Under the pieces are notes generated by a model. The model saw only the letters and a program-made list of their open reading frames with translations. It did not search any database and had not been told where the DNA came from. DNA of 63,912 nt, the filler included, from Octopus bimaculoides (taxonomy: Eukaryota), in the NCBI RefSeq assembly GCF_001194135.2. It is 8 parts of 8 records of this genome, joined end to end, with 100 filler letters (N's around TTAATTAATTAA, not from the genome) between each part and the next. Parts side by side here need not be neighbours in the genome. Positions count along the whole stretch, not along the records: positions 53,109 to 62,109 come from NC_068989.1; 7 more parts are not named here. One strand, written 5' to 3'. Shown piece after piece: positions 56,499-56,875 of this stretch (position 1 is the stretch's first letter; each line of letters opens with the position of its first letter). The position numbers were made by a program, and so were the translations under genes.

Positions 56499-56875
56499 TT
56501 GCCAACTTAATGTGACAGTCCCAGGAAAGGGAAGAATGTTACTGTTATTTAGCCTCCAAAAACACCGTTTGTAGTTGGCTACATGACACAAGCATTCTGT
56601 GTCGATAAGTTTTCAAACAGGGGAGATAAGCACCTTCACCCATCAAAGCCAGCATCCAGAAACTAGTTTCAGGATAATTGCCCTTCATCAGTCTACAAAA
56701 GTAGAAATATTGTATTTCTAAATATCTCAGAGAGAGTTATGCAGTAACAGCATGATAAAATGATGGTTTGTTGCCAACTTAATGTGGCAGCGACATCTAG
56801 CAGGGCAAAGCTACACTTTATCATGCTGTTACTACATAACTCTCTCTGAGAAATTTAGAAATGTAATATTTCTAT
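56499..56875 (-). mobile_element. Hammerhead-bearing repeat: 272-nt unit, partial second unit, inverted arm
   Basis: ttgccaacttaatgtg at 56499 and 56771; about 60-bp inverted repeat (56701-56762 vs 56814-56875). Confidence 0.75.
56657..56695 (-). ncRNA. Minimal type I hammerhead ribozyme, canonical core (family H2)
   Basis: Minus strand: taga-CTGATGA-AGGG caatta TCCT-GAAA-CTAG-TT-tctg; palindromic ACUAGU stem III; GUU triplet. Confidence 0.85.

What the first reader, a model, noticed from the sequence alone, without database searches (positions are those of the whole stretch)
56657..56695. Minimal hammerhead ribozyme with an intact catalytic core on the minus strand
Seen: minus strand reads UAGA-CUGAUGA-AGGG(caauua)UCCU-GAAA-CUAG-UU-UCUG. 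Every core nucleotide is canonical. Stem I pairs 4 bp (one G-U), stem II pairs 4 bp (one G-U), and stem III is only the palindrome ACUAGU. Predicted cleavage is after GUU, between 56661 and 56660. Established: minimal type I hammerheads with a palindromic stem III occur in Penelope-like elements and metazoan non-LTR retrozymes, and can cleave as dimers. Inference: this copy may still self-cleave. I cannot check whether this family has been described in octopus.
Basis: partly seen in the sequence, partly recalled or inferred. Interest (0 to 1): 0.9.

Follow-up and report, generated by a model that had tools for sequence, protein, structure and literature searches.

The report
Decayed hammerhead ribozyme in octopus retroelement
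The motif is a real hammerhead-ribozyme relic carried by a short interspersed octopus repeat of the Penelope/retrozyme kind, which is a known kind of element, and this particular copy probably no longer cuts itself efficiently.

Summary
A single match like this means little: about 0.002 are expected per piece, so hundreds per octopus genome. Rfam gives no significant hammerhead hit.

It is not alone, though. The same strand of the 9-kb piece carries two more hammerhead-shaped motifs: B (59163-59119, C3->A) and C (58745-58708, U4->C). That is three hits against 0.006 expected. The three copies have different helix sequences that still pair, and all share an unusual A10.1-U11.1 pair.

A and B lie in homologous elements flanked by (TA)n. 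Copy A shows a 272-nt unit as a partial tandem plus an inverted partial copy. A 5'-truncated fourth copy lies on another Octopus bimaculoides chromosome. These are the marks of Penelope-like elements and non-LTR retrozymes.

As a dimer, copy B folds into the classic double hammerhead. Copy A has the only intact core, but its helices are weak, its site is GUU, and a 12-nt palindrome (GAAACUAGUUUC) buries G12-A14.

Verdict: a new member of a known kind. The family once carried a working ribozyme. Self-cleavage by this copy is doubtful.

The parts
56657..56695 (-). Hammerhead copy A (the finding). Helix I 5' strand 56695-56692; core C3-A9 56691-56685; helix II 56684-56681 / 56674-56671 with loop 56680-56675; G12-A14 56670-56668; palindromic helix III 56667-56662; H17 = U at 56661; helix I 3' strand 56660-56657. 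Predicted cut between 56661 and 56660.
56659..56670 (-). 12-nt perfect palindrome GAAACUAGUUUC. In a dimer it pairs G12-A14 with U17-U1.1-C1.2 of the partner, giving an inactive duplex.
   Evidence: dimer MFE -21.0 against double hammerhead -7.8 kcal/mol
56692..56705 (-). Hairpin UCUAC-UUUU-GUAGA that competes with helix I. It is present only in copy A. Rfam's type-III model used it as helix I in a non-significant alignment.
56497..56656 (-). Body of element A downstream of the cut site. It ends in the hairpin motif CUGUCACAUUAAGUUGGCAA (56518-56496), followed by (TA)n.
56696..56800 (-). Upstream partial unit of element A. It comprises a second copy of the terminal hairpin motif (56790-56768, 91% identical to 56518-56496) and a ~75-nt 'leader' running into the hammerhead. 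The repeat distance gives a 272-nt unit.
   Evidence: homologous to L004 2206-2290, score 41 against 15.8 +/- 2.4
56806..56882 (+). Inverted copy of the leader (77 nt, 86% complementary to 56694-56770). It forms a head-to-head partial copy next to (TA)n.
   Evidence: (I18)
59119..59163 (-). Hammerhead copy B: CGAACG AUGACGA AGGG aaauaa CCCU GAA ACCCGGGU C CGUUCG. Helix I is 6 bp, helix II 4 bp, helix III an 8-nt palindrome, and the site is GUC. The core carries C3->A.
   Evidence: homodimer MFE -36.7 is the double hammerhead
58966..59262 (-). Element B, homologous to element A, with (TA)n at both ends (58922-58955 and 59271-59300).
58708..58745 (-). Hammerhead-like copy C: CUGU CCGAUGA ACG gaaa CGU GAA ACUCAAUGU A ACAG, with U4->C in the core. 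It shares the 5' flank ATATTTCTA with copy A and abuts (AT)n at 58757-58768. The rest of its element is cut off by another repeat.
56450..56481 (.). (TA)n microsatellite at the 3' end of element A. Its partner tract at the other end is 56891-56902.

Best explanation
The motif is a genuine type-I hammerhead ribozyme sequence. It belongs to an old, dispersed, non-coding octopus retroelement family with a unit of about 270 nt, ordered hammerhead - structured body - terminal hairpin CUGCCACAUUAAGUUGGCAA - leader - hammerhead.

Inferred mechanism for the ancestral, active element, by analogy with PLE and retrozyme hammerheads: the element is transcribed as read-through or multimeric RNA. Two hammerheads pair through their palindromic helix III, and helix I is exchanged between them, forming a double hammerhead. 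Each cuts after N-U-H, which releases unit-length RNA with a 5'-OH and a 2',3'-cyclic phosphate. That RNA, possibly circularised, is copied in trans by a Penelope-like RT/GIY-YIG enzyme and inserted into (TA)n microsatellites. This leaves slightly more than one unit (a partial tandem), often with an inverted partial copy.

Shown here: the motif itself; its recurrence with co-varying helices; homology of the elements; the (TA)n flanks; the 272-nt partial tandem; the inverted partial copy; and a 5'-truncated copy at another O. bimaculoides locus.

Inferred, not shown: catalysis, circular RNA, and the identity of the mobilising enzyme.

The copy at 56657-56695 is a relic. It keeps the whole core, but its helices have decayed and misfolds dominate. 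It most likely cleaves very poorly or not at all.
For: Three hammerhead-shaped motifs lie on one strand of 7.8 kb, against 0.0057 expected; 0 of 3000 shuffles gave 3 or more.

Holding the core and helix II fixed and shuffling the flanks, the flanks form helix I, helix III and H17 not G with P = 0.04 (A), 0.008 (B) and 0.025 (C).

Helix I pairs in all 12 cells with different pairs in A/B/C: position 2.1-1.1 is A-U/G-C/U-A, 2.2-1.2 is G-C/C-G/G-C, 2.3-1.3 is A-U/A-U/U-A, and 2.4-1.4 is U.G/A-U/C-G. Helix II position 10.2-11.2 is G-C/G-C/C-G. All three share A10.1-U11.1 (read from the sequence).

The homodimer MFE of copy B is exactly the double hammerhead.

Elements A and B are homologous. A fourth, 5'-truncated copy in the same orientation lies in O. 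bimaculoides CM046624.1, so the hammerhead is on the sense strand of a retro-copied element.

Both ends of A and of B abut (TA)n; P = 0.01 per random interval. Copy A has a 23-nt terminal motif repeated 272 nt apart and a 77-nt inverted partial copy.

These features match published PLE/retrozyme descriptions. PMC4209133 describes dimeric hammerheads and palindromic helix III. PMC8557442 describes pLTR partial tandems, inverted 5'-truncated copies and (TA)n targets. PMC7229834 and bioRxiv 10.64898/2026.07.22.740005 describe type-I hammerheads in ~170-400 bp non-autonomous units derived from PLEs.

Penelope-like elements are abundant in octopus, with an expansion at JC distance ~0.2 (PMC13282606, PMC8967140). 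This is compatible with the ~28% A-B divergence.
Against: No Rfam hammerhead family matches. There is nothing at E<=10 over the piece. In a 96-nt search, Hammerhead_3 scores only 11 bits (gathering score 48.5), in a register without helix III.

There are only three hammerhead copies and four element copies, because I could not sample the genome further.

Each of B and C has a core substitution, and A does not fold as a hammerhead, so no copy seen here is predicted to be active.

G10.1-C11.1, a hallmark of natural hammerheads, is absent.

No RT/GIY-YIG coding sequence and no second tandem hammerhead is present in the piece. The leader of B is not significantly similar to that of A or D.
Confidence: 0.78

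Rival explanations
1. Copy A is still an active self-cleaving ribozyme. It cuts after GUU between 56661 and 56660, as a dimer with another copy.
For: It is the only copy with every core nucleotide intact, and helices I and II can each form 4 bp. Hammerheads with palindromic helix III are known to work as dimers (PMC4209133, PMC7229834). From general knowledge, GUU and A10.1-U11.1 lower catalysis but do not abolish it.
Against: The hammerhead fold is 4 kcal/mol (monomer) and 13 kcal/mol (dimer) above the MFE. The dimer MFE pairs G12-A14 inside a 12-bp palindrome. A local hairpin competes for helix I. There is no tandem partner at this locus. Even consensus PLE min-hammerheads cleave poorly in vitro (PMC4209133).
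Confidence: 0.15
2. The match is pure chance. An AT-rich repeat happens to contain CUGAUGA...GAAA with short complementary flanks.
For: The motif is short. About 0.002 strict hits are expected per 7.8 kb, which scales to hundreds per genome. Rfam is silent. The same 25-nt string occurs in unrelated metagenomic DNA without the helices.
Against: Three hits against 0.0057 expected. The flanks meet the helix constraints in three copies with different sequences, for a joint conditional probability of about 8e-6. Copy B folds into a textbook double hammerhead.
Confidence: 0.04
3. The conserved block is kept for another reason, for example a protein- or RT-binding stem-loop or an internal promoter of a SINE-like element. 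On this view the hammerhead likeness is incidental and never catalytic.
For: No activity data exist. The A10.1-U11.1 pair is atypical. The 3' module of the element also has conserved hairpins unrelated to catalysis. In three copies, two carry core substitutions.
Against: A binding hairpin would explain helix II only. It would not explain the unpaired CUGANGA and GAA strands, the A15.1-U16.1 pair with H17 not G, or the co-varying helix I that closes the three-way junction in all three copies.
Confidence: 0.06

Closest known systems
Canonical metazoan type-I hammerheads of non-LTR retrozymes and satellite-like repeats (newt satellite 2, Schistosoma Sm-alpha, coral/mussel/axolotl retrozymes; PMC7229834)
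   Same: Type-I topology. Helix II is 4 bp with a 6-nt A-rich loop, and helix I is 6 bp in copy B. Helix III is 1-2 bp with a small palindromic loop, so it acts only as a dimer. The unit is AT-rich, non-coding and ~270 nt, within the 170-400 bp range. The copies are dispersed.
   Different: The 10.1-11.1 pair is A-U instead of G-C. No multi-copy tandem array is seen here, only ~1.1 units in copy A. Loop1-loop2 tertiary contacts cannot be recognised. There is no Rfam Hammerhead_1 score. Circular RNA has not been shown.
Minimal hammerheads in the pseudo-LTRs of Penelope-like elements (Cervera & de la Pena 2014, PMC4209133; Craig et al. 2021, PMC8557442)
   Same: Palindromic 15.2-16.2 / helix III. 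Dimer-only design. Partial-tandem plus inverted-partial insertion structure. (TA)n target preference. High sequence variability between copies. PLEs are abundant in octopus.
   Different: PLE min-hammerheads typically have a long helix II (6-8 bp), an extra unpaired nucleotide between A9 and 10.1, and G10.1-C11.1. None of these is present here. No RT/GIY-YIG ORF adjoins these copies.
Hammerhead_3 (Rfam RF00008)
   Same: It shares the CUGAUGA...GAAAC core and a hairpin before the core in copy A.
   Different: It scores 11 bits against a gathering score of 48.5. Helix III is unpaired in that register, and the hairpin is absent from copies B and C. Rejected.

Membership tests
Hammerhead ribozyme (type I) | Catalytic core C3 U4 G5 A6 N7 G8 A9 ... 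G12 A13 A14, A15.1-U16.1, H17 not G | tested here: met
   Copy A has all positions canonical. Copy B has C3->A and copy C has U4->C.
Hammerhead ribozyme (type I) | Three helices around the core with the open end at helix I | tested here: met
   In A, helix I is 4 bp, helix II 4 bp and helix III a 6-nt palindrome. In B the values are 6 bp, 4 bp and an 8-nt palindrome. In C they are 4 bp, 3 bp, and 2 bp plus loop. Helix III in A and B can form only between two molecules.
Hammerhead ribozyme (type I) | Helices supported by covariation among homologues | tested here: met
   All four helix I positions pair in A, B and C with different pairs, and 10.2-11.2 is G-C/G-C/C-G. The conditional flank-shuffle P is 0.04, 0.008 and 0.025. 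There are only three sequences.
Hammerhead ribozyme (type I) | Conserved G10.1-C11.1 pair | tested here: not met
   It is A-U in all three copies.
Hammerhead ribozyme (type I) | Score at or above the Rfam gathering threshold for a hammerhead model | tested here: not met
   No hammerhead hit at E<=10 over the piece. In 96-nt searches, A scores 11 bits on RF00008 (gathering score 48.5) and B has no hit.
Hammerhead ribozyme (type I) | The active fold is energetically accessible | tested here: inconclusive
   For A the hammerhead is -1.3 against an MFE of -5.4 as a monomer, and -7.8 against -21.0 as a dimer. For B the dimer MFE of -36.7 is the double hammerhead.
Hammerhead ribozyme (type I) | Mg2+-dependent site-specific self-cleavage | not testable with these tools
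   This needs in vitro transcription or RNA end mapping.
PLE pseudo-LTR minimal hammerhead | Lies in the terminal repeat of an element encoding RT and a GIY-YIG endonuclease | tested here: not met
   There is no long ORF in or beside the elements. A six-frame query found no protein homologue. An autonomous partner elsewhere in the genome was not testable.
PLE pseudo-LTR minimal hammerhead | Long helix II (6-8 bp) with an extra nucleotide between A9 and 10.1 | tested here: not met
   Helix II is 3-4 bp and starts directly after A9. The criterion comes from PMC4209133.
PLE pseudo-LTR minimal hammerhead | Palindromic 15.2-16.2 / loop 3 | tested here: met
   ACUAGU in A and ACCCGGGU in B. Not palindromic in C.
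PLE-type insertion | Partial tandem (pLTR-like), adjacent inverted partial copy, microsatellite (TA)n target | tested here: met
   In copy A a 23-nt motif is repeated 272 nt apart, there is a 77-nt inverted arm (I18), and (TA)n lies at both ends of A and B with P = 0.01 each. The criteria come from PMC8557442.
Metazoan non-LTR retrozyme | Tandem repeats of 170-400 bp, each with a type-I hammerhead | tested here: inconclusive
   The 272-nt unit fits, but only ~1.1 units and one hammerhead are present per locus. TRF finds no array.
Metazoan non-LTR retrozyme | Expressed as linear and circular unit-length RNA | not testable with these tools
   No transcriptome data were reachable.

The most novel reading that the evidence does not exclude
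Octopus genomes may harbour a still-active, lineage-specific retrozyme family. Its hammerheads would use an A10.1-U11.1 pair and a fully palindromic helix III, with intact tandem copies elsewhere in the genome producing abundant small circular RNAs and being mobilised by octopus Penelope-like elements into (TA)n microsatellites. The copies seen here would be its fossils.
Probability: 0.15. Interest if true: 0.55.

Novelty: new member of a known kind. Interest (0 to 1): 0.3.

Why it matters
Hammerheads in Penelope-like elements and animal retrozymes are well established. The find therefore extends a known class to octopus, where my searches of the held literature found no description of hammerheads.

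Its modest value has three parts. It gives a seed of three hammerheads and four element copies for annotating part of the large pool of unclassified octopus repeats. It shows a family-wide A10.1-U11.1 variant. It adds another case linking hammerhead-bearing non-autonomous elements to (TA)n-targeted, PLE-style insertion.

It does not open a new question, and the specific copy is probably dead.

Tried and rejected
(1) Rfam cmscan over the whole piece, and over 96-nt windows around copies A and B, gave no usable hammerhead hit. The type-III register suggested for A was rejected because helix III does not pair and the helix I hairpin is absent from B and C.

(2) A metagenome scan with the 25-nt consensus returned three loci. 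All are unrelated, coding-looking DNA without helices I or III.

(3) I tried to fetch more octopus copies through ORFs. Exact look-ups of 11 window ORFs found nothing. A concatenated six-frame translation of both elements found no homologue at E<=1. A 46-aa LINE-tail ORF found no candidates.

(4) A SINE-ORF query worked, but only one of the eight proteins was on record with DNA. That gave 25 kb of O. bimaculoides sequence with one truncated copy.

(5) Scans of bacterial/archaeal genomes and of viral contigs for the element's 3' module, and of the genomes for the SINE, found nothing.

(6) An apparent decayed hammerhead upstream of copy D in L004 turned out to be the tail of a different SINE. 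I rejected it.

(7) An nhmmer profile of the element found no further copies in the piece or in L004.

(8) MAFFT could not keep helix III and the helix I 3' strands in register. I therefore tabulated the pairs by hand and did not use the count of structure pairs or a covariance model.

(9) ARAGORN found no tRNA genes in the piece.

Full report
**Observation.** Read on the minus strand, 56695 to 56657 is UAGA CUGAUGA AGGG caauua UCCU GAA ACUAGU U UCUG. Every catalytic-core position of a type-I hammerhead is canonical. Helix I and helix II are each 4 bp with one terminal G.U pair. Helix III exists only as the palindrome ACUAGU. The NUH site is GUU, with the cut predicted between 56661 and 56660.

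- The 10.1-11.1 pair is A-U rather than the highly conserved G-C.
- The palindrome extends to 12 nt (GAAACUAGUUUC, 56670-56659) and swallows G12-A14.
- The hairpin UCUAC-UUUU-GUAGA (56705-56692) competes for the 5' strand of helix I.

**Is it more than chance?** A strict descriptor (perfect core, helix I >=4, helix II >=4, helix III >=2) finds this single hit. It finds 0.002 hits per dinucleotide-shuffled piece (20000 shuffles). That scales to several hundred chance hits in a ~2.7-Gb genome (my figure for octopus genome size), so the single motif proves nothing. Rfam gives no help. No hammerhead family appears at E<=10 over the piece. In a 96-nt search only Hammerhead_3 appears, at 11 bits against a gathering score of 48.5, in a register whose helix III does not pair.

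**Related copies in the same piece.** The decisive evidence came from the surroundings.
- Aligning the neighbourhood showed a homologous element 2.4 kb away, at 58966-59262 on the minus strand.
- Its hammerhead region reads CGAACG AUGACGA AGGG aaauaa CCCU GAA ACCCGGGU C CGUUCG (59163-59119). Helix I is a perfect 6 bp, helix II 4 bp, helix III an 8-nt palindrome, and the site is GUC. The core carries C3->A.
- A relaxed descriptor (one core mismatch allowed) also finds a third motif on the same strand: CUGU CCGAUGA ACG gaaa CGU GAA ACUCAAUGU A ACAG (58745-58708, U4->C).
- That is three hits against 0.0057 expected. None of 3000 shuffles gave three.
- With the core and helix II held fixed and only the flanks shuffled, the flanks meet the helix I, helix III and H17 constraints with P = 0.04, 0.008 and 0.025 for A, B and C.

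**Covariation.** The helices differ in sequence but keep pairing. In A/B/C the pairs are:

| Position | A | B | C |
|---|---|---|---|
| 2.1-1.1 | A-U | G-C | U-A |
| 2.2-1.2 | G-C | C-G | G-C |
| 2.3-1.3 | A-U | A-U | U-A |
| 2.4-1.4 | U.G | A-U | C-G |
| 10.2-11.2 | G-C | G-C | C-G |

All three copies share the unusual A10.1-U11.1 pair. This pattern is what a hammerhead once under selection would leave. Neither coincidence nor a simple binding hairpin explains it.

**Folding.** As a homodimer, copy B has as its minimum-free-energy structure (-36.7 kcal/mol) exactly the domain-swapped double hammerhead. Helix I and the 8-bp helix III form between the two molecules, helix II forms within each, and the cores stay unpaired.

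Copy A does not behave this way.
- As a monomer, the hammerhead fold is -1.3 against an MFE of -5.4 kcal/mol.
- As a dimer, the double hammerhead is -7.8 against -21.0 for a 12-bp palindromic duplex that pairs G12-A14.
- Added to this are A10.1-U11.1, a GUU site, short helices and no tandem partner.

Self-cleavage by this copy is therefore doubtful. I put it at about 15%.

**What carries it.** The piece is octopus. ORFs read from the abundant SINE in the piece hit only Octopus bimaculoides gene models. One of those proteins gave 25 kb of O. bimaculoides chromosome CM046624.1 as locus L004.

L004 holds a fourth copy of the element (about 2042-2330), in the same orientation and 5'-truncated. It has the 3' half of the body, the hairpin CUGCCAUGUUAUGUUGGCAA, and then a sequence homologous to the 'leader' that precedes hammerhead A (score 41 against 15.8 +/- 2.4 for shuffles). 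An apparent degenerate hammerhead upstream of this copy is really the tail of another SINE.

So the unit order is hammerhead - body - hairpin - leader - hammerhead.
- In copy A the hairpin motif occurs twice, 272 nt apart (56518-56496 and 56790-56768, 91% identical). Copy A therefore spans about 1.1 units.
- A 77-nt inverted copy of the leader lies next to it (I18).
- Both ends of A and of B abut (TA)n tracts, with P = 0.01 per random interval even in this TA-rich piece.
- The 3' module has conserved predicted hairpins.
- There is no coding capacity.

**Comparison with what is known.** The literature describes the same features:
- Dimer-only hammerheads with palindromic helix III occur in the pseudo-LTRs of Penelope-like elements, and they cleave weakly in vitro (PMC4209133).
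- PLE insertions are partial tandems with an adjacent inverted 5'-truncated copy, and they prefer (TA)n in some clades (PMC8557442).
- Metazoan non-LTR retrozymes are 170-400-bp non-coding units with type-I hammerheads whose helix II is 4 bp and whose helix III is 1-2 bp with a palindromic loop (PMC7229834).
- A recent preprint argues that retrozymes are non-autonomous PLE derivatives (10.64898/2026.07.22.740005).
- Penelope-like elements are abundant in octopus, with an expansion near JC distance 0.2 (PMC13282606, PMC8967140). This is compatible with the ~28% divergence between A and B.

In shape, the hammerhead here is closer to the canonical retrozyme type than to the PLE 'min-HHR', because it lacks the long helix II and the extra nucleotide after A9. 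It differs from both by having A10.1-U11.1. In the held library I found no paper that describes hammerheads in octopus or other cephalopods.

**Mechanism.**
- *Shown:* the sequence motif, its recurrence with co-varying helices, the sense-strand orientation, the retro-copy features, the (TA)n association, and the partial tandem.
- *Inferred by analogy:* read-through or multimeric transcripts pair two hammerheads through helix III. Each cuts after N-U-H to release ~270-nt unit RNA with a 5'-OH and a 2',3'-cyclic phosphate. This RNA, perhaps circularised, is reverse-transcribed in trans by a PLE enzyme primed at a nicked (TA)n, giving slightly more than one unit per insertion.

**Limits.**
- Only three hammerheads and four element copies could be examined. 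All other routes to octopus DNA failed.
- No copy seen here is predicted to be active.
- Family membership by Rfam score is not met.
- No autonomous partner was identified.

**Verdict.** The hammerhead/PLE-retrozyme interpretation is supported at the family level, with confidence about 0.78. The idea that this copy still cleaves is weak. This is a new member of a known kind, of modest interest (0.3).

Noticed in passing
window 53805-54200 (+), 56904-57276 (+), 58030-58234 (+, partial), 59755-60166 (-): Four copies of an abundant ~370-nt octopus SINE with an internal (TA)n/(TG)n microsatellite. ORFs read from it match only Octopus bimaculoides gene models, where it has been exonised. ARAGORN calls no tRNA in it.
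   Followed up: partly
L004 2042-2330 (O. bimaculoides CM046624.1): A 5'-truncated fourth copy of the hammerhead-bearing element with an internal duplication. It abuts the tail of a different SINE (copies at L004 ~1790-2040 and 2745-3030).
   Followed up: yes
window 56495-56605 (-), 58964-59072 (-), L004 2125-2234: The 3' module of the element has conserved predicted hairpins (GACAC/GUGUC, UAGCC...GGCUA, and the terminal GCCA...UGGC). Two pairs show double changes. These are candidate recognition structures for the mobilising RT.
   Followed up: partly
window 55085-55199 and 55626-55740: Two 115-nt direct repeats (90% identical) 541 nt apart, each ending next to A/T-rich sequence. This is an unidentified repeat family.
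   Followed up: no
window 54300-54700 (-), also 60560-60660, 61000-61100, 61870-62010: A repeat ending in (GAT)n/(ATG)n tracts. The 54556-54690 stretch reads like the C-terminal tail of a LINE ORF2 (...RKTRDEVLKDDLRTLNLS...). The protein search found no candidates.
   Followed up: partly
window 55801-56449, 57285-57699, 58524-58623: Assembly gaps (runs of N) begin or end in (TA)n tracts. Microsatellites broke the assembly, and further element copies could be hidden there.
   Followed up: no
L001 512-536, L002 1430-1454, L003 1286-1310 (JGI metagenome contigs): The 25-nt string CTGATGAAGGG(C/A)AATAATCCTGAAAC occurs in unrelated, coding-looking metagenomic DNA without helices I or III. The core plus helix II alone is therefore not diagnostic.
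   Followed up: yes
window 58646-58735 (+): The relaxed hammerhead descriptor also fires inside the (GAT)n tract (ATGATGA...). These hits are spurious low-complexity matches. They drop out once compact helices II and III are required.
   Followed up: yes
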